This document shows, piece after piece, positions 6,621-27,749 of a stretch of DNA of 64,000 nucleotides. The stretch spans positions 80,290,001 to 80,354,000 of the forward strand of contig NC_042997.1 in the NCBI RefSeq assembly GCF_006345805.1. The letters run 5' to 3'. The notes under the pieces are model-generated. The model ran no database searches. It worked only from the letters and a program-made list of their open reading frames with translations, and was not told the DNA's origin. Position numbers and translations under genes: made by a program. Position 1 is the stretch's first letter, and every line of letters begins with the position of its first letter. Origin of the DNA: Octopus sinensis (Eukaryota).

Positions 6621-8782
6621 ACAGGGAACAAACATGCTAACTCACAGGTATGTGCAAAAATATTACAGCTTCTAAAAACACTATCATTGTGTCAAGGAAG
6701 AGAATTTTGTTATATGAAGGTGGAGATGAAAAATGATGGGGAGGACAGTAAGTTAAGCTTGGTAAACAACACACACACCATGATTTTTAGTATTACCTTT
6801 GTGTCAAGGTAAGTTTTGCTATAGGTGGAAGGGTTTTCTGTAGAACTGCACATCACCAGTTAGCATAATCCTTTATCATCTCCATGGGATGCACTATCTT
6901 CAGGATAGCTTCTATCACTTTGTGTCCAAGTCTTATTTGGATTTTCTCTTCCATAGGTTGCTCTAACTTGCTGCAAATGCAACATTGGCCATACCAGCAC
7001 AGCCTTCTCTCTTGACCATAACATACGATTCCATTTATAGCCAGTTGTTCCCTTACCTCATTTGTATTGTAGTGTTCATTCACACAAACACTGTACATCT
7101 AACAATGTTTCCTGACTTAATTTATAGTCTTTGCAAGCATTCTGCATTCAAAGCCTGCATTTCACTACCATGCTCACATACTTACATTGATACATACAAA
7201 CATATATAAATGGTGTGTTGAAATGTTCTACCAATATTGGCTTGCTTCTAAGATTGCTATATAGGTATTTGAAATTTTTTTTTATTTGCACATGAGATCA
7301 ATTGTATACATGCCACAAGATTATTACTGCTTATTTTACCAACACATGAAGGATGAAAAATAATTCAGTCTGCCATATTAACTGAAGGAAAGGAAGTATT
7401 GAGTTAAACACAATATAGTCTACTTCTTGAACATTAATGCTAACATTAATGATTTCTAACAATGTAACACAGATTTGGAGAAGTACCAGTACTCCACTGG
7501 TACTTCAACAGTTTGGGTTTAGATAATATATGATTGCAATGTAATAAATCCATTATCAAATACCAAATCTCAACTCATTAAAACATAAAACTACTACTTT
7601 TGCTTTTATTTGCAATATATTTTTAACCAAAAACTTGCAGCATTTCCCATTATGATAGGTTGCTGCAAGTGATTTTATAAGGGTAAAAAATGGCTTTCTC
7701 AAACTTCAATTTGATTTCAATAAAAACAAAAAAAATATAAAATAAATAACACTATTGTACTTATTCAATTTGGTAATATAATCTTGCTGTTTTCTTTCCT
7801 TATTTGTTCATAATGATGCTTTAAAATGTTGCTGTTGTTGTCCAATCTTCATTCAAAGTCTAAATGGACATATTTTACATTTACACAAGCAGGAGTAATC
7901 ACATTTCAAGTGCCTTAGTATCTCATAATTTGCTGTATATCTGACACCCATTATACAAAGTATAAATTTTGAAAATAAATAGACGGCAACAACAATAAGA
8001 ACAGCATTTTGGAAGAAAAGTAAACAAGTAGAACACTTCTAATTATTAATTTGACAATGGCTACATTTCTTAAAAATTACCAAGTTTCCTAAGCACATTT
8101 CAAGTAGGCAACAACTAAATACCAATCCAAGAGTTTCTATTAGCTCATTGATTTTTCTTAGTTTCAGTTCTTACTGTCCATGTGTAGATTCTTCATCTTT
8201 CATCTGATTCAGATCTGACAACCATCAAATACAAGAAAATAGTAATTCCCATCTAGTACACACCATTAAATCTCATCTTATGCAAATCATTACAATCATC
8301 TTTAGTGGTAACTTAGTGCATCAGATGGACCTTCTCCCTTGAACATGTAGCATATGATCATATCTATCTATATTTCTATATTTGCAACATTATAAAACAT
8401 GGTTGACTCTGTAAGCTTATCTTTACTTAAAAATGGCTAACAATACTGTTTTATTTATTTATTCATTTATTTATTTATGTTTATTGAATACTTTAAAATT
8501 TCTGTGGCTTTGATCTCTAACTTGTTACATATTGTTTATACAACCACCTCCATGATTATATATCATACACACATATCACACACACACACAAAGAGATATT
8601 ACATACATAGATGGGTACATAAACAGAAAAAGATAAAAAGAAAGTGTAGGGAAAATGAGAGAGACAAAGTGAAGGTAAGAAGTACACAGATTGGTGATAA
8701 GTTATAAGGAATCAGTAAGTAGTACATTGTTTGAAGACACCAGTTGAAATGTCAAGTTTAGAATTTATTTGTCTAAAGGAAA

Positions 8783-8815
<33 letters not shown>

Positions 8816-9209
8816 GAATCTGTGTGGTGCATAATAATGATAGACTGAAGGTGATTATTGAGTATTATGGATCTATGGAGAGTGCTGGGTCAATAAGGAA
8901 CCAAAAAGTTATGTTATCACTGATATGGCATTGTGTCTATGACCAGCTGCTTGGTACACCAAATTATAAATAGGAACAATTTGAGTTTGTATATGGTAGT
9001 GAAAGTAAATTAAATGAATGCTTTGTTTGTTTCAAGAACTGAATTTAACTTCTCTTACAGTGGACAACAGCTTGGAGTTAGTCTCTAAGATAATTTCCTC
9101 TAGATACAGTATACAAAGACAAAGTCTTCATGCTCTTCAGACTTTGTTTCCCCCAAATATCAAATCAGTTGACAATGTCAACGTTATCGGACTTAAGAGA
9201 ATCAGTGTT

Positions 9210-9478
9210 TGGTTATGTAAAACTATGGCCCTAATTCTAACTAATTAATTGCCTCTAATGCAGTCACAGCTTTTTACTCCGCTTACACTTAGATAAATCT
9301 ATTACCCCTTTAGCATTTAAACAAACCATACATAGCCTTTATGTTCAAACTGGTTATGTAAAACTATGGCCCTAATTCTAACTAATTAATTGCCTCTAAT
9401 GCAGTCACAGCTTTTTACTCCGCTTACACTTGGATAAATCTATTACCCCTTTAGCATTTAAACAAACCATACATAGCC
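9210..9478 (+). repeat. 128-bp tandem duplication (period 141, one mismatch)
   Basis: 9210-9337 equals 9351-9478 except ttagataaatc/ttggataaatc; 13-bp spacer tttatgttcaaac. Confidence 0.95.
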
Positions 9479-9650
9479 CAAATATTCTACCTCCTTTATG
9501 TTCAAACTAGTCAGACCAAGCTTCTCACACCTATCCCACAATGTCAGTCTTAAAAATAATCACATCATCAAAATCTTAAAACTATGAGATAATGCATGAT
9601 GAACTCAAAAGGATGTGAATAAATATGTATCACATTTGACCGAACCTTTT
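9443..9650 (+). mobile_element. MITE family 1 copy, truncated; left end caught in a tandem duplication
   Basis: ttacccctttagcatttaaac...atgagataatgcatgatgaactcaaaa...gtatcacatttgac. Confidence 0.65.
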
Positions 9651-10584
9651 TCAGGTGGTCCACAAAAATTCAAAAGGAATATTTCATAAATTACCAAATA
9701 TAAATTTACTTTTAATTGCATTATGCAGCACTATAGGACATATACCTTGTGTATCAATATATTAAAGAAACAAAGTACACTTGCAGTATAATGTAATGCC
9801 AATTTGAGATGCCCTTCAGTACAAGATAACACATGTATTTAGTGGTGTCAATACAATACAATGGATTATGGGAATTACCATTACTCAAATGCATAGAAAC
9901 ATAAAGAAACAAAAAGAGAAAAAAATTAAACAAGTTGATAAGGAAAATAACCTGCCTCTCTAATCAAATATCTATATAGAAAAGAAAATGATAAAATTTC
10001 TGGTTCAGTGTCACATTCAGTTATCAGCAATGATCTGCATTTTACTTTTGGTTAGACATTAATGAGAATAGACATTACGTATGATTTTGGAAAGCAATAG
10101 AAAGTTGTTTGTGTGTGTGTGTAGCATGAGGTAGTCATTGTTCAAGTAACTTAACTGAATTAAAAAAAGAATATATTTTAATGCCAGGAAGTAAAATATT
10201 AAAAAAAAAATATTACACAGTATTCTCAGGGCTTCAGATAATGTGTCGATAAACATTGTTCAGCTATCATGCAAAACCAAACAAATGATATTTTTTTCCC
10301 CCTAATGACATAATTATCAACAAATAATTTAGAAACACTAGCTATACATGAACATAAAATGATCTATACAATCATGATTTCCCTAGTCAGAAGAATATCT
10401 ACGTCTGATTAAAGATGCGAAGTGAGAAAATAAAACTTTTAGCTAACACATATGTCAATTTTCAATTATTTTCCTTTTTATGTTATTTTTTCTATTTTTC
10501 TTTTTTTTTCTTATGAATTCTGATAATCATCTTGAGAAAAAAAAGTCATGGTGAAAAATAAGAGTGAATACAAATCAACTGTAC

Positions 10585-10754
10585 CTCTTTCACTGGCATC
10601 ATCTACCATGATAACTTCTTCCAGTAATTCTGGAGGAGATCTGTTGATGATACTATGTACAGTCCGTAGTAGTGTAGACCAAGCTTCATTATGAAACACT
10701 ATAATTATACTTGTTTTTAGATATTTTTCTATGGTGTAAGTTTTTTTCTTGCAC
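10585..10754 (-). CDS. GALNT1/GALNT13-like: Polypeptide N-acetylgalactosaminyltransferase, next coding exon (start of GT-A catalytic domain), 170 nt
   Basis: Translates (G)[56 protein letters not shown], containing the canonical [20 protein letters not shown] and DDAS motifs. Acceptor gatttccag|G (phase 2, completes GG+G Gly from the 24850 exon), donor G|gtacag (phase 1). Confidence 0.96.
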
Positions 10755-12379
10755 CTGGAAATCATAAGGAGTAAAAATTATAAACATTTTCAAGGTCATG
10801 TAACAAGCAAAATAAAACAGACAAAAACCATTAGAATATTTAAGAAAATACATACACTTCAGCAATTTATAATTCTTTGCAGTACACCTTAAAATAAATC
10901 AAAATGACTACTCTACAAAGTAGAGTATTTGTTTTGTACTCATTCAGCCTTGAGCTGTCTCCATAGATGACACTGAACTCCTGCAGGATCAGTCTGCTTA
11001 ACTAAAAATGTTTCAACATTCAGTGGGGGTACTGCATAAATACCTGTTTCTGGTAGTAGAGATACAAACAAGACTTGAAAGTTGAGGGTAGGTGTTAGTC
11101 AAGAACATAAACCCCAGTACTTAACTAATATTCTATTTTATTGACCCCCAAAGAGATGAAAGACAAAAATTGACCTCAATGGGATTAGAACTCAGAATGT
11201 AAAGAGCCAGAAGAGATACTGTAAAGTACTTAGTCTGATATGCCAATGCTGCTGCTCATCTTCCACTGAATAGCTGTTGATCCACTACACAAATAATAGC
11301 AGATTCATTGAGTTATAATGTTACTGAGTTCAAATATTGGAGAAGTAGTCCATTAAATGTTTATAGGACTGATAATCATCTACTGTTGAATGCATTTAAT
11401 TGAAGGATGAAGTTTACATTTGTAGTACATGATGAAGGATGACAGTTACACCTTCAGTACATATTGAAAAGTGAAAGTTGCACCTACAATGCATATGAAA
11501 ATGTGGAGATGGCACTACATGTCACAATTGCATAAAATAAAACTGATTCAATACTAATTCTTAATTACTGTTGTTTTAGTGAGAGTAAAACCTTTATTAA
11601 CCTTTTTTCCTGGGTTAGCATGGGTGGGAAATTTATTGCAAATTTGGATATTTTCATAGGATGATATGAGCAATTACTTTTCTCTTCCTATTAACTACAC
11701 TGGTGTAAATGACATCACAACATCTATTAAAGCAGTTGAATGTGACTTAAAGATTTGGTATCAATGTCTAGCAAGTAGAGCCACAACATAGAAGGTCCTT
11801 CATTGATATTATATTGCTAGAAGATGTATAGGCAATAAATATGAGTAACTGCTTGAAAGTCAACAGATGAAATAGGATGAAATACCACTAAGTTATCAGA
11901 TTGTAGTTTTGTTTGATGTATGGGTCGAATAAAGCATTCTATAATATCTACAGCAGCTTTCCTTTTGGGGTAAGCCAAAATCCAGATCTATGTAAGTGAT
12001 GTGCAGAGGAAAACAACTTTCTCCATCAAGAATCTATGTGCCAACAAAGTCTGAAAAGCCATGTTGTGAAAAATGACAATAGACACCACATGGATAAATT
12101 CCATGAGTCCATGCAAGCAAACCATGCAAGGGAAAACTTAGGATAGAAGCTTTCTGCCAGAACTACATTTTGTGAACCAAATGTGTGCCATGGAAGGCAG
12201 ATACATATACACAGGCTGCCGGATGCTAGGGACAAACAGGTGTTTATCAATAGAGAGAGCTGTAGAGATAGTAGAGAAAATAACAATGAGAGAGAATATG
12301 GAAGAGGGAAGACAGAAATGGAAAATAAAATTTGGGTTTATATTAGACTGTCATACTACAGTGAACAGATGTAAACCAG

Positions 12380-12590
12380 TTAACCCTTCAGCTTTTAAAC
12401 TGGCCAAATCTGGCCCATATATTCTATCTGCTAGATATGGCCTCTTACACCTATGCTACAATGTCATTCTAAAACTAGACAAACACATCATTGATATCTT
12501 GAAGCTACAAGATCAAAGCATGATTAATTCAAAACAGTGTGAATAAATAAGCATTACATTTGACAGAGTAATATGAATGCTAAAGAGTAA
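12380..12590 (+). mobile_element. ~210-bp TTAA/CCC MITE (piggyBac-type), family 1
   Basis: ttaacccttcagc...aatgctaaagagtaa; homologous to copies at about 9443, 34671, 36112 and 59967. Confidence 0.8.
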
Positions 12591-13439
12591 AGAAAGTGTT
12601 GAAGGAAATTTGAGCTTCCTGTCAGAATAAGTTCTGGCTGTACTGCCATTAAACCAGAAATAAAACAGACACATGCCACCTTAGCTGATATCTAATCACA
12701 TCAGAAAATAAATCACCAGACAGTAGCTAGTCAATATATTTAAAATCCAACATTATTTATATGTTAACTTACCAATTCAGAGAAATGTACATTGGGTCAA
12801 CAAAATGGCCATTATACAAGAGAATACATAAACAAGTTCACTAAGTATTACCATCCAGTGCAGCATTTTAACACTTTATAACAGTTCAAAGATATATACA
12901 AACACGTCTTAGCTGGATGCACAGATGCTATAAACCTTCAAATTGTAGTGACTTTATTAGGAAAGGGAATTCCACTCATGTGATGTGGAACCGAATGGGA
13001 AACAACTTCTACAACTGTGAGGTAGAATTAGGTACATAGAAATACATAGTATCTCCGAAGAATAAAGATATGTAGTCATGCATCTCTGACCTCTAATTTA
13101 CCAATCTACTGATGTTGGATGGGGGTGGGGATTTAGAGTGAAGGATTATGTAAACAAAAGAACTAAGATCTAGTAGTTAAGCAATAAATCTTAAACCAAT
13201 CAATAGCTATTTGTAATGTTAATTTATTCTTGCTTTATCTTATGCAAATTTCTTATCAACCACACACAATAAACTCAATATGTGAATGTATGAGAGAGAA
13301 AGAGATATAGATAGATAGAGAGAGAGTATTCATGAATTCTCCAGGATCACAACAGTAGAAACCCTGTGTAACTTATAAACAAAACAATAATACACCTCCT
13401 ACTTGATATACAGAGTACCTTAACTATGCTTTCTTCAGT

Positions 13440-14400
13440 TTCCAATGTTTGCTTTGGTATTGTTTCTATGACTGGGTGCTCTTCCTAAAGCCAACTAGTT
13501 TACTGAGTGCGTCTTTCAAGTGACAATCAATTGAGAGGTTACCAACTAACTCACAACACTAAGATCTCTTACAACTGAATGAGAGTATAGTAGTGAGGGA
13601 GGCAGTTTATGCTGGGTGTTGAGAGGTTAAAAATGTGAAAGAAGTGGCAAGAACAAGTAGATACATGGTTACTTTGCATTACATAGGCATAGGTAGGAGT
13701 GATTGAAGTACAGATGATGGGAAGATAAGATGGTGATGAAGTGTTAGAATGAGCCCACAAGAGACATGAAGAATAGAAGAGTGATGATAGAAGAATGGGA
13801 TGGGTGGATAGAGGTTGCAGGAATGTATGGGGAGAGTGAGGGATGTTTAGAGGGTGAATGTAAGTGAATGCTGAACAACAATGAAAGAAGGTGGTCAATG
13901 ATAAATGGGTTGGAGCTAAGGTGATGACTGGCAGTACAGAAAGTATAAAGAGCAACTGAATAGTAATAAAGTAGGCAGAGGAAAGATAAGAGAAAGAGTG
14001 ATGCCTGGGTGGTAAGATTGTGAGAGTGAGAGACAGTGTGTAAGGAGAGTGAAAGACATTATAGTGATAGGAGTGTATCAATGGTAAGTGGCTCATGGAA
14101 TAGGAAGTAATAGGTAGCACAGAAAAGAAATCAATGTAAAATTTGAGTGAAGAGGGACAACATAAAGAATAAAGGATGAATGACAAAGAAAGTAGTTCCA
14201 GGCAGTGGGAGAGATAACTGGTTGTATAGAAAAGAGTGATGAAATATGTAAGTATGTTCTTATTTAATTACAACAGCAGAATACTAAAGTAGTCTGGTAA
14301 GTGATAAAGGGATCAGTGACAGAGATGAGAGAGTGGTAGGGAAAAGATTGATGGAGAAAAAAATAGAGTGAGGGGTCACAGTTGTGTATATATACAGAAT
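13440..14400 (-). mobile_element. CT-rich body plus RTE-like tail element, copy 2
   Basis: Tail (gctttggtattgtttctatgactgggtgctcttcctaaagccaac) followed by an AG-rich plus strand. Confidence 0.55.
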
Positions 14401-14449
14401 GCTTTTGGAACCTTAGTTTTGCTCTGAAGGGTGGGTCTCCTTGAACACT

Positions 14450-14760
14450 GCATATTGCCAACCATCTCAGTCCTGTGATCAGCCTTTACTATTGCTTCCC
14501 ATGCCTTTTTGAATCTCACTCTTCCACAAGCTCCATCAACATTGAGTGGCACTTCTTTATGCAGATGACCTCATCCATATGGATCATGCATCCATACCAG
14601 TGCAGTATTCTATCTTAAGTCCAGTTTTTCTCTCAACATATTACTTTGTCATTCCTGCACATCCATCAGAGCATGCTCACTTCATTTTCTTTCCAGTATT
14701 GTGTATTCAAAGTGTGCAGGCCTTGAATGCAGACGACTTATGAAAACTTCTGCATTCTGT
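14450..14760 (-). mobile_element. RTE-clade LINE 3' fragment, minus strand
   Basis: Reverse complement aligns by eye with 52840-53130 (gaaatgaag-agcatg, gagagaaaaactggac, ataaagaagtgc). Confidence 0.7.
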
Positions 14761-15087
14761 TCAAATTTCTCTGTAGGTTGAAAGACTGATGGAAAGCTTA
14801 ACTGATTTTCAACCATTAGTAAGGTCTCATCAGAGATCTAATCCTGACAAACAAGTAGCCAGTCCATCTATATACACATCAAATCTAGTAGCTTCAGAGA
14901 ACTGGAGTAACTAATTTGCATACTATAAGCTCATTCTGTTCCAAAGACCTAGTCTTATATATATCACCTTGACTTCACAACCACCTAACCTGAACATTGC
15001 TATATTTACTTGGACATATTTATATTGTTTTACTATCGAAGTATGGGAAGCTGAAAAAATATTTCATATTTTATGGTAGGCAGGCAG

Positions 15088-15240
15088 GGTTACCAAGTAT
15101 GCAAAGAGTTAAGGAATGGAGTAGATAATATCTGGGCTACATATGTTTCATAGCGAGTGGAACCTCGGAAGTAGTAAATATCTAAGTAAGGGGTATACCG
15201 CAGGCTACTCTTCAGGCCAAGGGTATCTTGATTAAATGAA
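15088..15240 (-). mobile_element. Penelope-like pLTR fragment hosting the 15135-15218 hammerhead
   Basis: Short GC-richer insert containing the HHR, adjacent to a TA-rich microsatellite at 15241-15260. Confidence 0.5.
15135..15218 (-). ncRNA. Type-I minimal hammerhead ribozyme motif, PLE type, intact core
   Basis: Minus strand reads GGC CTGAAGA GTAGC [49-nt loop] GCTAT GAA AC ATAT GT A|GCC. Stem I GGC/GCC, stem II GTAGC/GCTAT, 2-bp stem III closed by palindromic ATAT, GUA triplet. Confidence 0.78.
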
Positions 15241-17597
15241 GTATATATACATATATAATGTGAGTAGTCATATGGCTCCTCCACAGAGCAAGAAACTTGT
15301 TTGCTCTGGTCCCTTCTCTCATACTTTGATCCCTCATCTCCTAGCATAAAACTCAACTACCTTAGGGTTTGTATTCTTGTAAGCTGCATGATGACCTCAC
15401 TAGTGCTGGTGGCATGAAGATGTTTCTTGTTATATAGGAGATATATGACTGATGGAGATAAGAGGATGCTAGTGTTCACAGAATATCAAGATGGTGTGTA
15501 TAAGAGAAGAAGGTTAGTAGATCACAGGAGGGGATGAGAGAGTGGATACTTTCATAAGAGTGTGAGGAGGAAGTGTGGAGGTGAGTGTAGTGAGTGAAGA
15601 ATGAGGGTGGGAGGTGCAGATGATGAGAAATATCAATATGCAGAGGAGTGAGGTGGGAGATATGAGTGACTTAGGAAGAATAGAAGTGAAAGTAGTAGAA
15701 TGATGTGCAAGGTATAGGAGCTGTGGAGAGAGGAAGAGATAGGGATACATAAGGGGCTATAGTAGGTGGGTTGTGATAGTAGATATAGGAAGGCATTGAG
15801 AAAGATAAGAGGTGTTTAGAATGGCGTTTAGCAGAGGGGAAAAAAGGAGGTGCTAGAATGCACAGAAAGGAAGTGATTAGTTGAAATAGTGAGGGCAAGG
15901 ATGATAAGGAATGGAAGTAGTTTGGGAGGATGGGACTGTTTGGGAAGGTATGGGATGTATTATGTGTGGTATTGCTTGCAGGTGAGTACAGCAGCCATAG
16001 ATTGGGGGGGGGGTGCTTGACACGGCTTCACATACAAGCCTATGTGAGTGGTTTTAGGATATCATTTTTGCTATAACGGGTAGGTTCACACATATACATG
16101 CAAACTTTCACACATGTATAAATATGATAGGCTTCCAAATAGTTTCCATCTACTAATTTCATTCACAAGGCATTGGCAGGCTGAAGCTATAGTAGAATTT
16201 GTTCAATGTAGCACCACATAGTGGGATAGAACCTGAAGCCATTTGGTTATGAAATGAAGTCCCTCTCTATTCAGGCATATCTGCACCTTTATCCTTCAAT
16301 AAGATATGTCTTTTGCAGGGTGACATACATAAAAAGTAACTTACCACATATGAAAACATGGTTCGATTAGTAAAGTACAAAAATACACTGAAGAACTTGG
16401 GAAGTAACATTTGATATAAAGCCAGCATTAATTATGTTATCAACCCAAATAATTAAGAACACATTTAATGGATAGAGCAGATCTTTTAAGCATTGGCAAG
16501 AAAAAGAATTATTAAAGGAAAATTACTCTCATAGATATTCCAGAGTGAGTTATCTCTCTCTCTCTCTGTATAAATGAGTATACACACAGACACACACACA
16601 AACACATAATGAAAAGAGGAGTTAATGTAAATGAGTAGAACTGTTATAAAATATATCAGCAACTCCTGTGGTTAATTTCTCAGAATATTTGATCTCCAAC
16701 ATGAAACATACAACAAATATTGATTAGTACTGTCAGAGAGGTTCACTCATGGTCATTATATATACTTGAAGCTATCATTATAAATCTCATATGCACCTTT
16801 GACGAATATCAACTCCTTAAAGCTATCCCTAAAATTTAGGGAGAGTCTAATAGTTTTATAGTATTGTCTTCACACAGAAGACAAATCATCTACAAGTGTT
16901 GCAGTAAAGGAATAGATAAGAATATCTAACTTATACACATTGAATAGATTTTTATTTCATTTGTCATCAACAAACTTACTAACTACAAGATCATCCCTAA
17001 ATCTCTAAGCCATAAATTACAGCATTAAAAACTGAGCTATCACAGTGTTGATGAAAACTTAACTATTATATTTTCCTGTTCAATAAGAAATAAGATAGGA
17101 ATGCATTTTGGAGAAGACACAAGAATGCTAGCACATAATGGGGCTAAGATGCCATATTGATCAAGAAGCCATAGTGCAAATAGTATGTAAACATTAGTTG
17201 CAATCATAAGACCAACATAGATACACTGTTGTAACTTCTGATAATTATATTCTGATATGATGTCATGTTCTATAGGAAGGTTGTTAAACTATTCTCAAGT
17301 ACAATGAGCTGTAAACTTGTAGAAGAAGGCAGAGAAACTCCTCTGGCTAAAAATAATAAACCCTTTGCATTTGCATCTCTAAATATTATAAAACAAGCTG
17401 CTAAAATAAAATATATTGATCTACATCTCTCAACAACAACATTATAGCTATCTGTCTAGCACTCATTATATATTAAACAATTGTCATAAAAAGGAAATCA
17501 TAGCTAAAGTTTTACAGGGTGGTTGTTGACTCATAAACCTTAATAGGAACAAAAGTATGGATTAAATCAATATCAGCTCCAAGAAGACCCTATGGTA

Positions 17598-18703
17598 TGA
17601 GGGTGAGTTGAAAAGTTCATATGTTGATTATGGAGGAGTGATGCTACAATGGTGAAATCTTACATGCATTAATTTCAACTCTTCTTATTAATAACTGCAT
17701 TGTTTCTTTCCAGGTAAACTGACATCTTACTTTTCAAAGAAGACTTCAAAAGTAATTAGTAGTGGCTTCTCTTGAAAATGGACAAAATCTGTCATCATGG
17801 TGTTATCAAGTACCTGCACGAAAATGGGTTTAACCAGCAAGGACATTCATGGTGATATGGTTACTACATTAGGGGATGATGCTCCAGTGTTATCAACAAT
17901 GCAAAAGTGGGCAGCTGAATTTAGAATTCTGTACAATAATCTTGACATGGCAGGTTTCTGCTTGGTAGGTGTCATGTCTTCTGACATCTAATCAAAAGTG
18001 CACCGGATTGATCACACAATGGGAAAATCTGACATTGTTTGAGGCATATCCAGCTGGTTTCCTTGAATGTTTCCTAATCCAGGATGAGTGTTGGGTTCTT
18101 CACTTTGAGCCAGAGACAAAGAGACAATCCATGCACTGGAAATACTTCTCCTCACCTGTTCCAAAGAGCATCTACAGAGAAGATGATGGCTTCAGTTTTT
18201 TGAGATGCAAAGGGAATTGTGTTTATTGACTATCTTCAAAAGGTTCACACCATCAATGGAGAGTACTATGCCAAATTGCTGAGGCAGTTACAAAAGGCTA
18301 TTAAGACCAAATGCCCAGGAAAACTGACAAAAGGAGTATTGTTTCATTAAGGAAAATGCTCTAGCAACCAAGTCCTTGCTTTCAATGGCTACTGTGTGTG
18401 ATTGTGACTTTGAACTGGTTGATCACCCTTCCTATTCTTGTGATTTGGCTATTATCTGTTCTCCAACATGAAAATACATTTGGCTGGGAACTAGTATCGC
18501 AGTGATAATGTTGTCATATCTGGTGTTGATGACTTTTGGGACCAACAGGATGAAAGCCAGTTCACCAATAGGATCAAAGCACTGCAACACTGATGGAAGA
18601 AGTGTGTGGACTGCAAGAAGAACTATGTTGAAAAGTATACCTCATTTGGTCACATTCCATGAGAGTATCTAGGTCAGCTTATGAACTTTTCAACTGACCC
18701 TTG
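17598..18703 (+). mobile_element. Mariner (DD34D-type) transposon, defective
   Basis: TIRs tgagggtgagttgaaaagttcatatgttga / tcagcttatgaacttttcaactgacccttg, with TA at 17596-97. Fragments MDKICHHGVIKYL, GLTSKDIHGDMVTTLGDDAP, DECWVLHFEPETKRQSMHWK, HPSYSCDL; frameshifts and stops present. Confidence 0.9.
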
Positions 18704-20880
18704 GATTAATTGAATGCTTACGTTTGAAGCATATAAGGTTATAAAAAAAATCTGATGAAACAATTTACAATCTGATACTCTTAAGTGTTTAACATTCAAG
18801 GGTTTATGGTTTGACATGAAGATGTGAATTTCAGAGAGTGTTTATCTTGCACAACATTACATGTGCTGTCGTGGATTGCAATACTTAACTGGTAAATAGA
18901 CAAAAACAATACAATTATTTTCTATCTGTAACTGACTGATGTAGCTTAAAGCTACATGGATTCAGCAAGATTCATTATTTAGAAAGGCTTTAGATATTAA
19001 CTTTGTGGTAAGTGTTTTCACATTCAAATAACTATGGTAATACAAAAACCAAAATGCACCTGTGGAACCACCTTATTACAATAATGATTATGCTTTGACA
19101 TGTACACATGATTGAAAAAAAAAAAAAAAGCCTCTCCTATTATCTACCCTAGCTAATTAAGTAAAAATATAAAGATATCAATTAGTAATAATTGCAAGAA
19201 CAAAACAGAACTCTATCAACATGCCTAACCCAGGAACTGAATCTGGGTTAGAGTTCCTTTAGTTGTTTCATAACTAATATATACATATATATATGCAAAC
19301 TTAGGTTAGTTAAAATATGCTTGTGACATATTGCAGCTAGTAAAGGCAAATTCACTGCAGTTAAGAAAGACAAAAAATTCTCTCTTATCTGCTGAAAGTG
19401 GGTGTATTCCCTGTCATTTAAGTGTGAATTTTCAAACAAAATACATTAAATAAGAGGTAGAGAGGAAACTAATTTCAAATTAAGAAGTACTTAATCTTTT
19501 ATTATATTTCTAAACCCTTATGTATTTCAATTAAATTCTAAAATAATTGTGAATTTAGATTGGTTTCATAAAACAATTCTAACTTTTATATTTATCAACT
19601 TATTTATGTGATTTTTGGAACATGATTGCACAAAAGGTTCTTAACCAGATCTGTTTCATTATTTCTGCCTTAAAGTAAATCTAATTACAGGTAAATACAA
19701 GTAAATTCAACAAAATATAAAATTATTTAAATTTTGTTTAAACATCAGGATAGAAAATGAGTTATTAGCTAATATTCAGTGAGTATACAAAATTTTAATA
19801 GAGAAATTACTGGATTACTTATCAGTTGAACTTAATTGTACATAAAGGTAAAACTGAATGAAATACTAGAATTACTCTTTGAAGAAAACTAGGAATGAAA
19901 TACATGCCATCAGTTAAATGAAATAAACTCACACATGTATATAAATCCATAGAAACACATATAATAAAGATGATTCACAATCAAAATTAATTGTGCTTTG
20001 TCATGCATTTTTAAGGTAAATTAAAATTAAAGTTAAATAAAAAATAAAAACGAGGTAAATTTAAAAAAAAAAAAATTTCGAAATCAAATTTACACACACG
20101 CATACACACACCCACAGTATTCTTAAAAATGCTTGGATTTCTAACTTTCTTCAAAGTATGTGAGAAACCTCAAAATATCTTTTTTCTCTCTTTGTTTACG
20201 TTCTGTGTAACAATTAATTTTTGTAGTAATTGCTTCAAAGGAGAAAATAAAAGAAATAGTCAAATAGTTTCATTTCCAAGAAAAGATTGTGGCTAGGTCT
20301 AATATCTTCCTAAAAAATTACTAAAAAAAACCCAGTTTTTAAATGCTTACTATATTCAGATACAAATTCATTTTCCTTTTTTATTCACTATCAGAACTGA
20401 AGTCTGAATTGTTTCACTTTAGGTAAAAAGAAATTCCTGATTCATAATCACAGACATGGTTTTTATGTTTGCCATAGATTTTCTTAGATTTTTCTGTCTT
20501 CTTTTGAAAATACTTTGAACTCAAAATTCAGTGCTTGGCAACATGAAACTGGTATCCATTTTTCATCCATAGTGAAAAAAAACTCTCCAAAAATTCGCAA
20601 CATTCAGATATCATGTACAATTAATAGTGCATAGTGCAACTCAATTGTTTACGTAGTGAAACCATGTGTTTGCACAAATGTACTAAGATTTCCACTGAAA
20701 TTCTCATTTAAATAACAAATAGGTCATTTCAGACAGTTTTGGTAATAATAATGACGATTTTTTCGGGAGGCTACAGCTTGGTTAGTAACCAAGACATTAA
20801 AAGTATAATAGGTCTGCTTTGTCTTTATACAATTTTACACCTTTCCGCTGCAGGTCTTTTTTTTTCCCACCTGAAATCTA

Positions 20881-21784
20881 TTCGGTCATGCCATAAATAA
20901 TGTGTTTTTTTTTTTATACTCCTTTCATTTTTCAAAATTAAGATAAACAAAGTTCTTTTTTAATCTAAAATATGCTCTCCATTTTCTACAATGCTCTTCC
21001 ATCTATCTGGTAGACTTGTAAGATTCCTCTTCCAAAATTCACTTGTTCGTGACAAAAAATATTCCTCCAGTACTGTTTTCACCTTGTCTGCAGAATACAT
21101 ATTTTTTCTGTCCAAATGATTTTGAAGATTGCAGAATAAATGATAATCTGACAGGGCAATGTCTGGTGAATATAGTGGGTGGGGTATCATTTCCCATTCA
21201 AGCTGCTCCAGCTTTTGAAATGTCATTCTCACTGTATGTGGGTGAGCATTATCTTGATATAAGAACACTTTTCGCCTCCAAAGTTGATCATTTTCCGATG
21301 GTACTTAGGTGTCTATGAAATAGTTGAATGACCAAATCCAAACTTCTCTGCTAGTTCCTCAACAGTTATGATGGGATTTTGTTCCACCAGGGTTTGCGGG
21401 ATATCCTCACAGTCCTACAGATGAGGCTCATCTTCTAGGCTGTAGTTTCTGGCTTGGAATTTCTCCAACCACCATTGACACAGGCTTACGCATATTGTCC
21501 GATCCCCATATACTGCATTAATATTCCTCGCACTTTCTGTTGTGTTGCTGCCTTTATTGAACTCATAGAGCAAAATATGCCGAATATGCTCTTTTGTCAC
21601 TTCCATTATAGCTTTGAAATAATAACTGTTAAAATTGAACTGCAGTCTTCAAAACTTGCACTAAGTACAAGGTAAAATTACTACCTGCTTTTATAGCAAG
21701 TTGATGTAGGTAGTTTATCTTGTCCCCCTCCAACTTTTAGTTCATGCAATTGAAAAAAACCACATTATTTATGAGATGACCCAA
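20881..21784 (-). mobile_element. Mariner (Mos1/Hsmar-like) transposon, internally deleted
   Basis: TIRs ttcggtcatgccataaataatgtg / cacattatttatgagatgacccaa with TA flanks at 20879-80 and 21785-86. ORF pieces MEVTKEHIRHILLYEFNKG (HTH) and QDNAHPH...HPLYSPDIALSDYHLF. Confidence 0.92.
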
Positions 21785-22145
21785 TATCATTGTATAAATA
21801 AATGATAAACAGATATATTGTAATACAATATCCTTATTAACACCAAACACATTCACCATGTCAGGTCTGATAAACACACCCAACAAGTGAAATGTAGTTC
21901 AACCTACTGAAGTTAGATGCACACTTCTCATTAATCACACATTTAAATGTCATACTGAACAATATAGTTCCTGCAATACAAATAATGGGATTGTCACAAA
22001 GAGAATACTTTTTTCATAGCTTTTTGATTACAACTACTCTGGGACATGATAAGATCACGGTTTCCTTTGGGTCAATGAGACAAGGCTTTTATGCAGGCAT
22101 GCAACCTGTTAAATATAGCAGCTACTAGATTTCCCTCAAATCATA

Positions 22146-23439
22146 CAGGGTAGGGGCAGAGAGGATGGACGTTTTTGAAATGAATATTAATTAGCTCCAA
22201 GGGGAGGGAGATAATACAACAGTTACCATTCGGTCTGTGGTGTTTTACTATTTTTTTTCCCTTGAAGTGAAGCCATGGCATTGTGGATGATAGAGCATTG
22301 TGTGTTTGCCTATGACAGTTACATGGAGAATAACAAGTCTGTCACAGAAGTTCAGCATGAGTTTCAGCACTACTTCAGCATTCACCGAAATCAGGATGTT
22401 CCCACCTGTAACACAATCTTACGATGGGTGAATGCACTTTGTACACAAGGTACACCAATGAATAGGAAACTGGTGGAGGTGTCGCAAACAGTATGGACCC
22501 TGGAAATGTAGAACGCATGGGACAAGTTTTGATATGGAGCCTGAATTACTCTGCTTGGGGGCATTCCACTAAACATTGCATTGGTAATCGATCGATAAGG
22601 CATATTTTACATGAAGATCTGCATTTCCACCCATACAAATTGGTCATTGGGCAACAATTGAAACCATGGGACTATGCACAACAGCTTAATTTTGTATGTC
22701 AGACGGAAGCAATTTTTGAGGCAAAGGACAACTTCATCTTGTTAATGAGTGATGAAGCTCATTTTCATCTCAGTGGCATGTGAATCAATAGAATTGTCTT
22801 TATTAGGCTCTTGAAAATCCAAGAGAACTGCATGAAAGACCACAGCACAGTCCAAAAGTGATGGTCTGGTGTGTTGTTGAAAAAGCTATCATCATTGGTC
22901 CTTATATTTTTGAAGAGAATAATGGAAATGCTGTTCCTGTGACCTCTGAGCATTACATCTAGATGATAAACAATTTCTTTGTGCCTGAATTACAATGAAA
23001 ACATGCCTATTTGATGTGTGTGTTTTCAGCATTCTTAGCCCTCTCTTTCGTGACCACCACATTTCCAGGCTTGCTGACATGACTTGGCTCCCTTAGTCCT
23101 CTGATTTGTCTATGTGCAATCATTTCTTGTGGGGAAACCTCAAGGCACTTGTGTATGCACACAAGCCTTGTACATTGGATAATTTGAAGGAAGCTATTCA
23201 CATGGAAATTGCCCAAATTGACAGAGTAATGCTGGAGAGAGTGGAGGCTAACTTCCAAGAATACCTTTAGAAATGCATCGATGAAAACAGACACCACATG
23301 ATGGATGTTATTTTTCATGCTTAATTTTGACAAATGCTAATTCAATACAAACACATTGATGTCAATAAAATTTGTTTGCAGCTAAAATTAATGATTTTGT
23401 AAATTTTTCAAGAATGTCCATCCTCTCTGCCCCACCCTG
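22146..23439 (+). mobile_element. Tc1/mariner-superfamily transposon (DUF4817-type HTH, probably DD37D/maT-like), defective
   Basis: TIRs cagggtaggggcagagaggatggac / gtccatcctctctgccccaccctg, TA TSD at 22144-45 and 23440-41. Fragments FAYDSYMENNKSVTEVQHEF, LHFHPYKLVIGQQL, MSDEAHFHLSG, IIGPYIFE, HFLWGNLK. Confidence 0.9.
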
Positions 23440-23576
23440 TACCATTATAAATTAGAAAAGGAAACAGGCTATGTACTCATATATATATATATGGATTTAA
23501 GATATATTGGTGTATTGAATGAAATCAAATGTTGGCACATGTCATACCTTTTGTGTCATAAATGTAGATTTCTCTA

Positions 23577-23929
23577 GGCACAGGCATGGCTGTGTGGTAA
23601 GAAGTTTCTTTCCCAACCACATGATTCAAAGTTCAGTATCACAGCATGGTACCTTGGGCAAGTGTTTTCTACTATATATAGCCCTGTGAATGGATTTGTA
23701 GACGAAAATAGAGAGAAGCCCATTGTATATAGACGTGTGTGTGTGTCATTGTCTGTCTCTCACCAATGCTTGACAACCAGAGGTGGGCTGTTTATGTCCC
23801 CGTAACTTTGTACTTTGGCAAAAAGGATTGAAAGAATAAGTACTGGGGCTGATATGTGTGACTAAACTGTTCAAGGTGGTGCCCCAGCATTGTTGCAGCT
23901 TAATGACTGAAACAAGTAAAAGTAAAAAG
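23577..23929 (+). mobile_element. tRNA-derived SINE family B
   Basis: ggcacaggcatggctgtgtggtaagaag...accttgggcaagtg...gccccagcat...taatgactgaaacaagtaaaag. Homologues at 2324-2598 (+), 16125-16275 (-), 33530-33850 (-) and 63370-63560 (-). Confidence 0.8.
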
Positions 23930-24849
23930 ACAGCTACATAGCACTCTCTAAGAACCAAGGTTATGTATAAGTACCAGTTACACACTAGGGTTGATGTAAT
24001 CAACTTGATCCCTTTGTCTGTCCTTGTTTGTCTCCTCTATGTTTAGCCCCCAGTGGGCAATAAGAAATAAATAATAGAGAAGACATATATGGATGAGCAG
24101 TAGTCAACACCCATGTATATTTGTGACACAGTATTTTCTTCACTATCAATGATAATGCTGTCAGTTTCTTTCTTGTACCATTAACAAAATAACACATCAT
24201 CTGAGATTAAATGCTTACCAATGTGAAATGTTTCTGTCATCTAACCTCAATTTTGCACTTCATGGAAATCAGTCAAACCAGCAGAATGGAATTTAAAATT
24301 CCTAATTTTGAATAGATACTGTGACTTTATTTTACATGGAAACCCACAAACCAAAGTAACTACTGAAAAATCATTCGGCCAACTCACTTGAAACTGCCAC
24401 TGGTTCTATAATACATTTGTTTCAAACATTAGCTTAATAAGGACAAACCTATTTAACTAAATTCTTCATTATTTTCATAATTAACAGAAGCAAAGGCAGC
24501 ATATTTCAAAAGAAAAATGGTAACAAAAAGCATTCAAGGGCTCAGATTAATCCAACTGCTGCTCTATGATTTGCACATGGTTCCTTAATTTAGAGGGAAT
24601 GTTTTGAACTTCCATAAATATTTCTTTTAATCAGAAATTTGTTTGGTAAATGCGGATCTGATGTTAAACAATAACTCTACGAACAACACTCTTAATTAAC
24701 TTAAAAGAATGCTCCCCATTAACTTCAGAACAAAAAAATCATTTCAGGTGCTCAGATCTTTTTAAGAAAATGTTTGGAATTGATCAATCACACATTCCCC
24801 TAGCATTAGACAGCTGCATTAAATAAGTCTGAACAGGAAAATTACTTAC

Positions 24850-25015
24850 CCGTCCATGCGGTAGTCAGGAAGGGATCTATTTAATGATATCATGTCACTA
24901 GCCACTAAATTGAATTGATTAATTTTAAATTTTTCTTTAGACTCTTGCTGCCTGTATGCTGGTACAATGACTGGTTTTCCATACTCCCCAGGACCTACTG
25001 GATGTGGTATCAAAA
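24850..25015 (-). CDS. GALNT1/GALNT13-like: Polypeptide N-acetylgalactosaminyltransferase, internal coding exon (stem region), 166 nt
   Basis: Translates (x)[54 protein letters not shown](G), matching the GPGE-GKPV...[20 protein letters not shown] signature of GALNT1/13. Acceptor gcatttcatttcag (AG at 25017-25016), donor GG|gtaagt (GT at 24849-24848). Phase 1 in, phase 2 out. Confidence 0.95.
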
Positions 25016-27743
25016 CTGAAATGAAATGCAAATAATTTAATTAGAATAAAAACAGTAAGATGAATTTAAAAAGGTACTGATAAGTTGGAAATAATCATTG
25101 GCTTCAGTGATGCAGAACTACTGTAACTTACACACCACACTAGTGGTAGTAGATAATCAATAATACAGTAGTATAATTTTATGTCATCCAAACCTACCTT
25201 AGTCAATCAATAGACTATCTTACTATCATATCAAGGTGTCAATTTAACTTCCAATTTATCAAAAACAAAAAGATTGATAATTAGGTTTGTTACAAATACA
25301 TCAGCTTTGAGGGATTCTAAAATAAGAAAGGTTTCCAATTCTGAAGAATCAACTCTCCCAAGCACAGAGTAACAATCACCCACATTAACAGGGATCATAA
25401 AAAGTTTCATTTCCATAAGAATACAGTAAATGAAACAGTATGACTCCCATATTGTAGTTATTATAAGTGGAAGGTTCTCAGGGTCAAGATTACATTGGTA
25501 AGTTTTACAAAGCAATGCACTGCCCCCACAAAATTGAAGTTAATCTTAAGTTAATCACTATGTCAACCTTCCCTTACATACACTGAACAGCAAAAGAAGT
25601 GCGATATTTTCAAACATCATTTTTATAAGGTAAATTCTGAAAATTAATTTTGGTGATGTAAGTGTAAATATTCCAAGACATGTACCCAAGCTATATGCAC
25701 CGCACTTACAGAAACACACTCTTAGTACATCTAATGTAACTTGATATAGTGATATGCACAATCTATAGTAACATTATATGCACAATATATAGTAACGTTA
25801 AATAATTTTGCATATGTAGAAAATTTTTTATCTTTATGTACTATTTATTTATAATAATAATATGTACTTTATTTATTCAATTAATGAGCGAAGTATTTGA
25901 TCTAAATATAAATTACTTTACTTATATAATAAGTTTAATTTATTAGTTAGTATTTGTTTTGAATATTAATTTGATATATAATATATATTTGTTATAAATG
26001 ACAGTCTAGTTTATGGTTTGCAGTAATTTTTTTTTTATATATTAGTCAACATGACTTTGTATTATATATTTCGAATTAGATTTATTTAGATGTTTATTTA
26101 ATTAATTAATACAATCTATTAATGAATATTAATTACATTATAGTTTTTAAATTAACTTAAGTTTATTGAATTAGTGGTTATAATATTGATACTGATTGAA
26201 TTAGTACTGAGTTTATATAGAATGGGTCTAAAAGTTGATTTGTTTGAATAAAGGTTGGGCTCCAGCGTAACCATATTTATACATATGAAACAAATAAATT
26301 TGTATAAGAGTATTAGAGAATATACAGTAAATTGTAGTTGTATAAATTAATTTTACTATATGGTGATTTGAGTATATTTTATAATAGTTAATTCTAAATT
26401 TTTGTTTTCTAGTGAATGATATTCTAGTGTATAGTGATTTTATTCTCTTTTTCTGTTAAAGCTAAAATATATTTGTAGTTTTCATTGATAAAATGTATAT
26501 TTCCATCTGTTTGTTTTATTTCTTTAAGTAATGTAATTCACGAGTAATTTATAAATGCTAAATAAGATGTTTTTCGTTTTGAAATATTTTAGTTAATAAT
26601 ACGCCTTTTAGAGAGATAAGTAGACTCTTTTATTTAAGAGTTAATGTTAATTTAGATATGTACATTTATTTAATTATTATTATTATTTTATAATTATTAT
26701 ATCTGAACATAAATTTTAAAATATTAGTTAGTCACTTTGGGATCTAGATCGTAAAAATGTTTTAATTTAACTAAAAGTTTCTTATTATATTTCCAGTACT
26801 ATTACATTTAATAATAATAGTAATAATAAAAATTTTATAAAGATAAGTTATATGTTTTTACTTTGGAATTTTTCAATTCTTATTTTTTATTTCATAAATA
26901 TTTTTGAAAGATATCTATAATATTTATGTAAGTAATAATGGACTAATTTATTTATTGTTTATATGTTTATTGATAGAAAAAATATAGATTTTTAATTACT
27001 ATATTTGTTGATTATAATTTAGATACTTACTTTTATGTATTTATTATTTTATAATTATTATAGGCGAACTAAAATCTAAAAATATTAAGAATAATTGTTT
27101 TGTAAAATAGTTTGGTAATTAAATATTAGAGTATAACTAAGTTAAAGATATTCTATAGTTTATTAATGTTTTTTAATAAGCTAAATTATATCTTTACAGA
27201 TAAATACATTTTTCTATCTATTTACTCTATTTTTTTACCTTAAATATTTAACATAATAAATGTATTGTAGGAAACTGATCCTAATGTTTTAAGTTTCAAA
27301 TTTAGTTAATGGAGGTTTTTCTATAAGAAAAATCATTATTTAATTTTTTTAAATAAATATTGTTTAACTCTATTTGCTTATCTATGTAACTATTATTGTT
27401 AACCTGAAGAGTGACTATAATTTTAAATTGAATTGATTTTTGATTAAATTTAAATTTAATTGTAATTCGAATTTAATTATTGTCATGAAATGTACGTAGT
27501 TTTTTTAAACTTATTATATATTGATTATTCATTTTTATACTTTTTGTGATCTAGTTATATGTTTTATAAAAATATTTTATATTTTATTTATGATTTGGTT
27601 TATGTCTATCATTTTTGAATTGCATAATAGTGGTTTTTTTCTCTAATTTACATATTATATTTTTATATTGTGAAATTTGATTTAATACTAAATTGAATTT
27701 TTCCCTGTAAGTTTGGAGTTATACTCCCTAATATTATTATTAT

Positions 27744-27749
27744 TATATA

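What the first reader, a model, noticed from the sequence alone, without database searches (positions are those of the whole stretch)
15135..15218. Intact-core minimal hammerhead in sense orientation inside the GALNT intron
Seen: the minus strand reads GGC-CUGAAGA-GUAGC...GCUAU-GAAAC-AUAU-GUA|GCC with all core nucleotides present. It lies between the two identified exons and on the gene's strand, so it must be in the pre-mRNA. Known: minimal PLE hammerheads with a 2-bp stem III and palindromic tetraloop cleave efficiently as dimers (Cervera and De la Pena 2014), and intronic self-cleaving ribozymes such as CPEB3 exist. Inference: as a single copy it should be nearly silent unless two transcripts pair. 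If active, it could cut a 14-kb intron co-transcriptionally and influence splicing or transcript level.
Basis: partly seen in the sequence, partly recalled or inferred. Interest (0 to 1): 0.7.

Follow-up and report, generated by a model that had tools for sequence, protein, structure and literature searches.

The report
Hammerhead-like motif, probably inert, in intron
The hammerhead-ribozyme-shaped sequence is really there, in sense orientation inside a 14-kb GALNT intron, but it looks like a crippled solitary copy (or a look-alike) of the minimal hammerheads spread by retroelements, and nothing suggests that it cuts the pre-mRNA.

Summary
The motif exists exactly as described: window 15218->15135, minus strand, with every core nucleotide present. 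It lies in sense orientation inside the 14,095-nt intron between two GALNT exons.

Several things argue against activity:
- Pair 10.1-11.1 is G.U, not the conserved G-C.
- Helix I has 3 bp, helix III has 2 bp, and loop 2 is 49 nt.
- No Rfam hammerhead model matches, even at E<=10 in a 116-nt search.
- The hammerhead fold is about 6-7 kcal/mol worse than a competing fold that buries the core (Boltzmann weight 1e-5 to 1e-7).
- No tandem or nearby partner exists for a dimer.
- The cited paper reports low, not efficient, dimer cleavage.

It is probably not pure chance. The window holds a second motif of the same build (27401-27501, plus strand) and a weaker third (14835-14797). About 0.02 strict and 0.09 relaxed hits are expected. 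All three have G.U at 10.1-11.1, in a window with CpG o/e of 0.18.

Against a shared family, the motifs share no flanks, no PLE protein remnant lies nearby, and copies with one core mismatch are not in excess.

Best reading: an inert copy of a dispersed minimal-hammerhead family (0.52). Chance look-alike: 0.30. Active regulator: about 0.04.

The parts
15216..15218 (-). Motif A, helix I 5' strand (GGC)
   Evidence: Pairs with GCC at 15135-15137. The next pair out is U.C, so the helix stops at 3 bp.
15209..15215 (-). Motif A, core box C3-A9 (CUGAAGA)
   Evidence: Exact match to CUGANGA. The window has 38 such sites on both strands.
15204..15208 (-). Motif A, helix II 5' strand (GUAGC)
   Evidence: Pairs with GCUAU at 15150-15154. 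The first pair, 10.1-11.1, is G.U.
15155..15203 (-). Motif A, 49-nt loop 2
   Evidence: It does not extend helix II. In the MFE fold, part of it (CUACUUCC..GAGG) pairs with the core box and the helix II 5' strand.
15150..15154 (-). Motif A, helix II 3' strand (GCUAU)
   Evidence: U11.1 precedes G12. This is TpG where canonical hammerheads have CpG.
15146..15149 (-). Motif A, G12 A13 A14 A15.1 (GAAA)
   Evidence: Exact.
15138..15145 (-). Motif A, C15.2, AUAU loop, G16.2, U16.1, A17. Predicted cleavage lies 3' of 15138.
   Evidence: Helix III is 2 bp with a tetraloop. A15.1 through U16.1 (ACAUAUGU, 15146-15139) is a perfect 8-nt palindrome.
15135..15137 (-). Motif A, helix I 3' strand (GCC)
27401..27501 (+). 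Motif B, a second hammerhead-like motif of the same build: AAC CUGAAGA GUGAC [66 nt] GUCAU GAAA U GUAC G U A|GUU
   Evidence: It is the only other strict hit in the window. It shares five features with A: N7=A, G10.1.U11.1, a 2-bp helix III with a self-complementary NUAN tetraloop, H17=A, and G1.1. None of 480 simulated chance hits share all five. Rfam gives no hit. It is antisense to GALNT and lies in an 18% G+C block.
14797..14835 (-). Motif C, a weak third hammerhead-like motif: CU CUGAUGA GACC [8 nt] GGUU GAAA A UCAG U U A|AG
   Evidence: It is found only with the relaxed descriptor (helix I 2 bp, helix II 4 bp). It again has G10.1.U11.1. It lies 380 nt downstream of A on the same strand. 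Its hammerhead fold is +5 kcal/mol, against -9.2 for the MFE.
10755..24849 (-). GALNT intron (14,095 nt) that contains motifs A and C
   Evidence: 5' splice site G|GTAAGT at 24850/24849. 3' splice site TTTCCAG|G at 10755/10754. The exon peptides match GALNT1/13-type Glycos_transf_2 proteins at E down to 7e-39.
13919..14735 (-). 5'-truncated LINE fragment (RT C-terminal part plus CT-rich tail) downstream of A and C
   Evidence: Homologous to 52853-53603 (+) and to about 7300-6000 (-). Its robust homology starts about 400 nt downstream of A, so A is not part of it.

Best explanation
Motif A is a solitary genomic copy of a minimal type-I hammerhead-type motif of the kind that retroelements (Penelope-like elements or retrozyme-type repeats) scatter through invertebrate genomes. 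It rides passively in the GALNT intron.

In their elements, such motifs are thought to act only when two copies pair through the palindromic helix III to build a double hammerhead.

This copy has several handicaps:
- It has no partner.
- It carries U instead of C at 11.1. That fits CpG-to-TpG decay of the canonical CGAAA, or a family trait.
- Helix I is only 3 bp.
- Loop 2 is 49 nt and unstructured.
- A competing 13-bp interrupted helix sequesters the CUGAAGA box.

It is therefore predicted not to cleave at a rate that could compete with transcription and splicing.

Shown: the motif, its location, its poor thermodynamics, the absence of a partner, and the excess of look-alikes in the window. 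Inferred: the retroelement origin and the lack of activity.
For: Excess of perfect-core motifs in the window:
- 2 strict hits are observed against 0.011-0.022 expected, and 3 relaxed hits against 0.065-0.09.
- The true core is the only one of 540 decoy cores with 2 strict hits.
- Given A, P(>=2 further relaxed hits) is about 0.004.

B resembles A far beyond what the descriptor requires:
- Among 480 simulated chance hits, 15.8% have G.U at 10.1-11.1.
- 2.1% have a 2-bp helix III with a self-complementary tetraloop.
- 0.4% have both, and none share all five features.

All three motifs have G10.1.U11.1, which is expected in 17.7% of chance motifs. The window's CpG o/e is 0.18, so CGAAA->TGAAA decay is plausible.

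Background from the literature:
- Minimal hammerheads occur massively as heterogeneous single motifs in metazoan genomes, with the same palindromic helix III (PMC4209133).
- Cephalopods carry Penelope elements, and 235 Rfam Hammerhead_1 loci were found in the giant squid (PMC6962438).
- Some Naiad PLEs have half-cores 35-50 nt apart and insert into (TA)n (PMC8557442).

Evidence for inactivity:
- No Rfam hit.
- MFE -14.3 against a hammerhead-constrained -8.5 kcal/mol, z=+0.36.
- P(hammerhead fold) is 1.7e-5 alone and about 2e-7 with flanks.
- No tandem or same-strand copy.
- Minimal hammerheads are barely active even as dimers.
Against: - A, B and C share no flanking or loop-2 similarity, and A has no paralogue in the window.
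- No RT or GIY-YIG remnant lies within about 4 kb on the motif's strand, for A or for B.
- Copies with one core mismatch are not in excess (2 observed, 2.5 expected). A neutrally decaying family should show such an excess.
- A lacks most hallmarks of published PLE minimal hammerheads: the bulged nucleotide, G-C at 10.1-11.1, a helix II of 6-8 bp with a short loop, and a helix I of 4-5 bp.
- The similarity features between A and B were chosen after seeing them.
- No sequence from the rest of this genome or from the orthologous site in a relative could be obtained, so no family has actually been shown.
Confidence: 0.52

Rival explanations
1. Pure chance look-alike. A, B and C are unrelated sequences that happen to satisfy a loose hammerhead descriptor in AT-rich, CpG-poor DNA. 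None ever was a ribozyme.
For: - At 0.011-0.022 strict hits per 64 kb, a genome of a few gigabases (size assumed) would hold several hundred chance hits. A scan that reads many windows will meet some.
- There is no Rfam score at all.
- There is no flank homology, no paralogues and no PLE remnants.
- One-mismatch copies show no excess.
- G.U at 10.1-11.1 is 15 times more likely than G-C in chance motifs here (17.7% against 1.2%).
- With a broader descriptor, 3 of 540 (strict stems) or 8 of 540 (relaxed stems) decoy cores reach the observed counts.
Against: - Given A, a second strict hit has probability about 0.02.
- That this hit also shares A's five free features has probability below 0.002 (0 of 480).
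- A third relaxed hit, again with G.U, lies 380 nt from A on the same strand.
- The true core outperforms essentially all 540 decoy cores on the real sequence.
Confidence: 0.3
2. A member of a still-active hammerhead family. The motif can cleave when paired with another copy (as a dimer or in trans), as part of a mobile element's life cycle, but it has no role for the host gene.
For: - A, B and C all have perfect cores, while one-mismatch copies are not enriched. That pattern fits recent or RNA-level selection.
- Helix III is palindromic in A and B.
- Published minimal hammerheads show weak dimer activity.
Against: - There is no tandem or nearby compatible partner.
- U11.1, a 3-bp helix I and unfavourable folding argue against activity.
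- No element body or repeat structure surrounds any of the three motifs.
Confidence: 0.1
3. One reading: a functional intronic ribozyme that cuts the GALNT pre-mRNA co-transcriptionally and tunes splicing or transcript level, like the CPEB3 ribozyme.
For: - The motif is in sense orientation in the intron, 4.4 kb upstream of the next exon.
- Intronic ribozymes with effects on expression exist (CPEB3, PMC10919898).
Against: - All the evidence for inactivity above applies here too.
- Dimerisation would need two separate nascent transcripts to pair.
- B is antisense to the gene, so the look-alikes show no consistent orientation.
- Hammerheads inserted in introns do not impair splicing unless cleavage is very fast (PMC2995048).
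- The conserved intronic hammerheads (HH9, HH10) have Rfam models, and none matches.
Confidence: 0.04

Closest known systems
Minimal type-I hammerheads of Penelope-like elements (Cervera and De la Pena 2014, PMC4209133)
   Same: - Type-I topology with helix I open.
- Intact CUGANGA and GAAA boxes.
- Very short helix III with palindromic 15.2-16.2 and loop 3, so that two copies could form one 8-bp helix III.
- Occurs as a dispersed single motif, and no loop-loop tertiary contacts are evident.
   Different: - No nucleotide between A9 and 10.1.
- G.U instead of the highly conserved G10.1-C11.1.
- Helix II is 5 bp with a 49-nt loop, against 6-8 bp with a short loop.
- Helix I is 3 bp, against 4-5 bp.
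- No PLE repeat or ORF nearby, and no consensus family demonstrated.
Type-I hammerheads of metazoan non-LTR retrozymes (Cervera and De la Pena 2020, PMC7229834)
   Same: Type-I motif with an unstable helix III that needs a second copy. Widespread in invertebrates, including molluscs (about 5000 copies in a mussel).
   Different: Those sit in tandem repeats and are recognised by Rfam Hammerhead_1. Here there is no tandem repeat and no CM hit.
Conserved intronic hammerheads of amniotes (HH9, HH10; Rfam RF02275, RF02277) and the intronic CPEB3 HDV-like ribozyme
   Same: A self-cleaving-ribozyme-type motif in sense orientation within an intron of a protein-coding gene.
   Different: Those are stable monomeric folds with tertiary contacts, are ultraconserved, and have measured activity. 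This motif matches no such model and is predicted not to fold. Its conservation could not be tested.
Naiad PLE 'HHR_half_core' cases (Craig et al. 2021, PMC8557442)
   Same: The CUGANGA and GAAA boxes are separated by an unusually long distance: 35-50 nt there, 59 nt in A and 76 nt in B. Naiads occur as old remnants in Octopus spp. and prefer (TA)n targets. A lies 20-40 nt from a TA-rich stretch, and B lies 243 nt from a (TA)79 array.
   Different: The Naiad cases did not fit any hammerhead stem descriptor, whereas A and B do.

Membership tests
Hammerhead ribozyme (type I) | Conserved core: C3 U4 G5 A6 N7 G8 A9, G12 A13 A14, A15.1-U16.1, H17 not G | tested here: met
   CUGAAGA ... GAAA ... U A|, all present.
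Hammerhead ribozyme (type I) | G10.1-C11.1 pair closing helix II next to the core (highly conserved) | tested here: not met
   G10.1.U11.1 wobble. The same holds in B and C.
Hammerhead ribozyme (type I) | Three helices around the core that form a stable or accessible fold | tested here: not met
   The helices can be drawn (3, 5 and 2 bp). The hammerhead-constrained fold is -8.5 kcal/mol against an MFE of -14.3. Its Boltzmann weight is 1.7e-5 alone and about 2e-7 in context. The MFE is no better than shuffles, z=+0.36.
Hammerhead ribozyme (type I) | Helix I / helix II loop-loop tertiary contacts needed for activity at physiological Mg2+ | tested here: not met
   Helix I is an open 3-bp stem with no loop or bulge, and loop 2 is 49 nt with no recognisable receptor. 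Judged from sequence only.
Hammerhead ribozyme (type I) | Score at or above the gathering threshold of an Rfam hammerhead covariance model (RF00163, RF00008, RF02275-7) | tested here: not met
   No hammerhead match at gathering score on the whole window, at E<=10 on 3.5 kb, or at E<=10 on 116 nt.
Hammerhead ribozyme (type I) | Site-specific self-cleavage 3' of H17 giving 2',3'-cyclic phosphate and 5'-OH ends | not testable with these tools
   Needs in vitro transcription or end-specific RNA-seq.
PLE minimal hammerhead | Very short helix III with palindromic 15.2-16.2 and loop 3 (able to dimerise) | tested here: met
   ACAUAUGU is a perfect 8-nt palindrome. Only 2.1% of simulated chance hits have this build.
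PLE minimal hammerhead | Extra unpaired nucleotide between A9 and 10.1; helix II of 6-8 bp; helix I of 4-5 bp | tested here: not met
   There is no bulge that allows pairing. Helix II is 5 bp including a wobble, with a 49-nt loop. Helix I is 3 bp. Criteria from PMC4209133.
PLE minimal hammerhead | Location in the flanking repeat of a Penelope-like element (RT plus GIY-YIG ORF nearby) or clear derivation from one | tested here: not met
   Pfam found nothing in six frames of 14100-15800, in the minus-strand frames of 11000-19500, or in the plus-strand frames of 23400-31600 around B. Old truncated copies could still escape detection.
PLE minimal hammerhead | Membership of a genome-wide consensus family with covariation | tested here: inconclusive
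   Only 64 kb was available. One close look-alike (B) and one weak one (C) exist, against about 0.09 expected. There is no flank homology. The covariation between A and B is imposed by the descriptor.
PLE minimal hammerhead | Second copy in tandem or close by on the same strand to form the active dimer | tested here: not met
   There is no tandem repeat and no paralogue. C, 380 nt away, has a non-complementary helix III (AAUCAGUU).
Non-LTR retrozyme | Hammerhead embedded in short tandem repeats (about 170-400 bp) | tested here: not met
   TRF finds no array at or near 15135-15218. The A-unit and C-unit do not align.
Conserved intronic hammerheads (HH9/HH10 type) | Conservation of the motif in orthologous introns of related species | not testable with these tools
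   A relative's contigs align to window 8567-12185 at 76-85%, but none reaches 15135-15218. Protein-based retrieval found nothing.

The most novel reading that the evidence does not exclude
The family would have U at 11.1, a long variable insert in helix II and a palindromic NUAN helix III. Rfam models would miss it. It would still be capable of cleavage as dimers or in trans. Intronic sense copies such as A would then give host pre-mRNAs a conditional cleavage site.
Probability: 0.08. Interest if true: 0.55.

Novelty: new member of a known kind. Interest (0 to 1): 0.25.

Why it matters
If the motif is only a passenger, this is ordinary: one more retroelement-type or accidental hammerhead look-alike in a long, repeat-filled intron, with no consequence for GALNT.

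The point worth keeping is statistical. Perfect-core hammerhead-like motifs are over-represented in this 64-kb window, and two of them share an unusual build that the Rfam models do not detect. If a genome-wide scan confirmed a family, it would extend the catalogue of minimal hammerheads to a variant with U11.1 and a large helix II insert. It would also show that covariance-model annotation undercounts such motifs.

Tried and rejected
1. Rfam. The whole window at gathering score, 3.5 kb at E<=10, and 116-nt and 131-nt stretches at E<=10 gave no hammerhead hit for A or B.

2. Dimer partner or tandem unit. TRF, self-BLAST and local alignment of the A-unit against the C-unit found nothing.

3. 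Idea that A's CUGAAGAG box is the codons of LINE RT motif B (G-L-K-...). Rejected. tblastn with the window's own LINE RT fragments gives no match at A. Pfam sees no RT there. The neighbouring LINE fragment's homology starts only at about 14735.

4. Idea that C derives from the LINE coding sequence. The alignment through C is about 50% identity and is not convincing. Left open.

5. Retrieval of the orthologous or paralogous DNA.
- The 88-aa ORF across A and a six-frame query of 14720-15520 found no protein.
- Exact look-ups of three window ORFs were not on record.
- The GALNT exon query did bring in a relative's contigs, but they stop at 12185.

6. An A/B-type pattern scan of the JGI metagenome contigs gave 0 matches.

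7. Supplementary sequences of the PLE and Naiad papers are not held.

8. The taxon of the window could not be verified, because no paper cites the run accessions.

Full report
**What is there.**
On the minus strand, 15218->15135 reads GGC CUGAAGA GUAGC [49 nt] GCUAU GAAA C AUAU G U A|GCC. An independent descriptor scan recovers exactly this span. The core is complete: C3-A9, G12-A14, A15.1-U16.1 and H17=A. The predicted scissile bond lies between 15138 and 15137.

- The pair next to the core (10.1-11.1) is a G.U wobble.
- Helix I stops at 3 bp, because the next pair out is U.C.
- The 49 nt between the helix II strands do not extend that helix.

**Context.**
Two ORF fragments on the minus strand carry the classic GALNT catalytic-domain sequences. 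One reads ...[21 protein letters not shown]. The other reads [56 protein letters not shown]. Joined, they hit GALNT1/13-type Glycos_transf_2 proteins at E down to 7e-39.

The splice sites are G|GTAAGT at 24850/24849 and TTTCCAG|G at 10755/10754, and the downstream exon ends at 10585. The intron is 14,095 nt. The motif is in it, in sense orientation, 4.4 kb upstream of the next exon.

The intron is full of decayed repeats:
- mariner-type transposase remnants;
- three copies of a LINE 3' part, one of which (14735->13919, minus strand) starts about 400 nt downstream of the motif;
- TA-rich microsatellites.

I could not verify the organism. Contigs from a relative, in public read assemblies, align to 8567-12185 at 76-85% identity.

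**Is it more than chance?**
Five null models were used with a descriptor tailored to the motif (helix I >=3, helix II >=4, loop 2 <=70, helix III >=2):
- dinucleotide shuffles;
- 1-kb block shuffles;
- 540 permuted decoy cores on the real sequence;
- local shuffles around the 38 real CTGANGA sites;
- a Markov simulation.

They give 0.011-0.022 hits per 64 kb on both strands. One hit is rare per window. Over a genome of a few gigabases (size assumed) it would be unremarkable, at several hundred chance hits.

The window, however, holds more than one hit:
- **Motif B** is a second strict hit at 27401-27501 on the plus strand: AAC CUGAAGA GUGAC [66 nt] GUCAU GAAA U GUAC G U A|GUU.
- **Motif C** appears with relaxed stems at 14835->14797 on the minus strand, 380 nt downstream of A: CU CUGAUGA GACC [8 nt] GGUU GAAA A UCAG U U A|AG.

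The relaxed expectation is 0.065-0.09. The true core is the only one of 540 decoys with two strict hits, and one of two with three relaxed hits.

B copies A's free features: N7=A, G10.1.U11.1, a 2-bp helix III with a self-complementary NUAN tetraloop, H17=A, and G1.1. Among 480 simulated chance hits:
- 15.8% have the G.U pair;
- 2.1% have that helix III;
- 0.4% have both;
- none share all five features.

All three motifs have U11.1. In this window CpG o/e is 0.18, so a canonical CGAAA would be expected to have decayed to TGAAA. Among chance motifs, G.U is expected in 17.7%.

**What argues against a real family.**
- A, B and C share nothing outside the motif.
- A has no paralogue in the window.
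- No RT or GIY-YIG remnant lies within about 4 kb on the relevant strand of A or B.
- Motifs with one core mismatch are not in excess (2 observed, 2.5 expected). A neutrally decaying family should show an excess.
- With a broader descriptor, 3 of 540 (strict stems) or 8 of 540 (relaxed stems) decoy cores reach the observed counts.
- The A/B similarity features were picked after the fact.

Weighing these, I put a shared hammerhead-family origin somewhat ahead of pure coincidence (0.52 against 0.30).

**Can it work?**
- No Rfam hammerhead model scores it, at gathering threshold, at E<=10 in 3.5 kb, or at E<=10 in a 116-nt search. The same holds for B.
- The MFE of the 84-mer (-14.3 kcal/mol) is no better than shuffles (z=+0.36). 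It pairs GCCUGAAGAGUAG with CUACU.UCC..GAGG inside 'loop 2', burying the catalytic box.
- The best hammerhead-compatible fold is -8.5 kcal/mol.
- The Boltzmann weight of the hammerhead helices is 1.7e-5 for the isolated motif and about 2e-7 with 50-200 nt flanks.
- Nearest-neighbour energies ignore tertiary stabilisation. This motif has no helix I loop or bulge to provide any.

A dimer would need a second copy. There is no tandem repeat, and the only same-strand look-alike (C) has a non-complementary helix III.

Cervera and De la Pena 2014 found no detectable cleavage for a single minimal hammerhead. They found only low activity for dimers and trimers, mostly at non-physiological Mg2+. They list as hallmarks a bulged nucleotide after A9, a conserved G10.1-C11.1, a helix II of 6-8 bp, a helix I of 4-5 bp and a palindromic helix III. 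Only the last is met here.

Hammerheads engineered into introns leave splicing intact, and only fast ribozymes abort it (PMC2995048). The CPEB3 case depends on a cleavage half-life matched to polymerase transit (PMC10919898). A slow or inactive motif 4.4 kb from the next exon would therefore have no effect.

**Comparison with known systems.**
- The closest match is the minimal type-I hammerhead of Penelope-like elements. It has the same topology and the same dimer-ready helix III, but differs in helix II, helix I, the 10.1-11.1 pair and genomic association.
- Retrozyme hammerheads sit in tandem repeats, which are absent here.
- HH9 and HH10 are stable, conserved folds with their own models, which do not match.
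- A suggestive but untested lead is the Naiad PLE clade. These occur as old remnants in Octopus spp. and prefer (TA)n targets. Some have half-cores 35-50 nt apart. A and B have 59 and 76 nt between the boxes and lie near TA-rich runs.

**Verdict.**
- The functional interpretation is not supported.
- The most likely reading is an inert, solitary, degenerate copy of a dispersed minimal-hammerhead-type motif. A chance look-alike is the main rival.
- The only mildly surprising result is the local excess of perfect-core look-alikes with a shared, Rfam-invisible build. A genome-wide scan would settle this quickly.

Noticed in passing
window 27401-27501 (+): Second hammerhead-like motif (B) with the same architecture as the finding. 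It sits inside an 18% G+C block and is antisense to GALNT. Its helix II continues into a long AT-rich hairpin in the MFE fold.
   Followed up: partly
window 14797-14835 (-): Third, weak hammerhead-like motif (C) with CUGAUGA, a 4-bp helix II and an 8-nt loop, but only a 2-bp helix I. It lies 380 nt downstream of the finding on the same strand and about 80-100 nt upstream of a LINE fragment.
   Followed up: partly
window 62735-62779 (+): Hammerhead-like motif with one core mismatch (CUAAGGA, G5->A), a 4-bp helix I, a 3-bp helix III with a tetraloop, a GUC cleavage triplet and again G10.1.U11.1. It is within the number expected by chance for one-mismatch hits (2 observed, 2.5 expected).
   Followed up: no
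window 26050-27740: About 1.7 kb of 18% G+C sequence with no coding potential, directly followed by a (TA)79 microsatellite at 27744-27900. Its origin is unknown.
   Followed up: no
window 13919-14735 (-), 52100-53603 (+), about 6000-7300 (-), 58702-58947 (+): Several decayed copies of one LINE family. Recognisable parts are RT motif B (...VGVHQGS...), ...ARLRTGWRKYKELQPL..., ...HGSETQAL... and ...RWYGH... They are followed by a CT-rich tail that gives long spurious S/L/P/H-rich ORFs (205, 178 and 171 aa).
   Followed up: partly
window 20960-21606 (-) and 22275-23270 (+): Two mariner/Tc1-type transposase remnants in opposite orientation inside the same GALNT intron (for example ...QDNAHPHTV...LYSPDIALSDYHLF...).
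   Followed up: no
window 9210-9478: A 141-bp unit duplicated in tandem at 99% identity (TRF score 531), just downstream of the GALNT exon.
   Followed up: no
whole window: Strong CpG depletion (o/e 0.18) with TpG excess (o/e 1.31) at 33% G+C. This bears on any motif that contains CpG.
   Followed up: partly
L001-L003 against window 8567-12185; L004-L008 against window 10582-10761: Public read assemblies hold the orthologous exon. One relative has alignable intron flanks (76-85% identity). A more distant one matches only the exon (84%). The window has one extra C in the polypyrimidine tract before the 3' splice site compared with the closer relative.
   Followed up: partly
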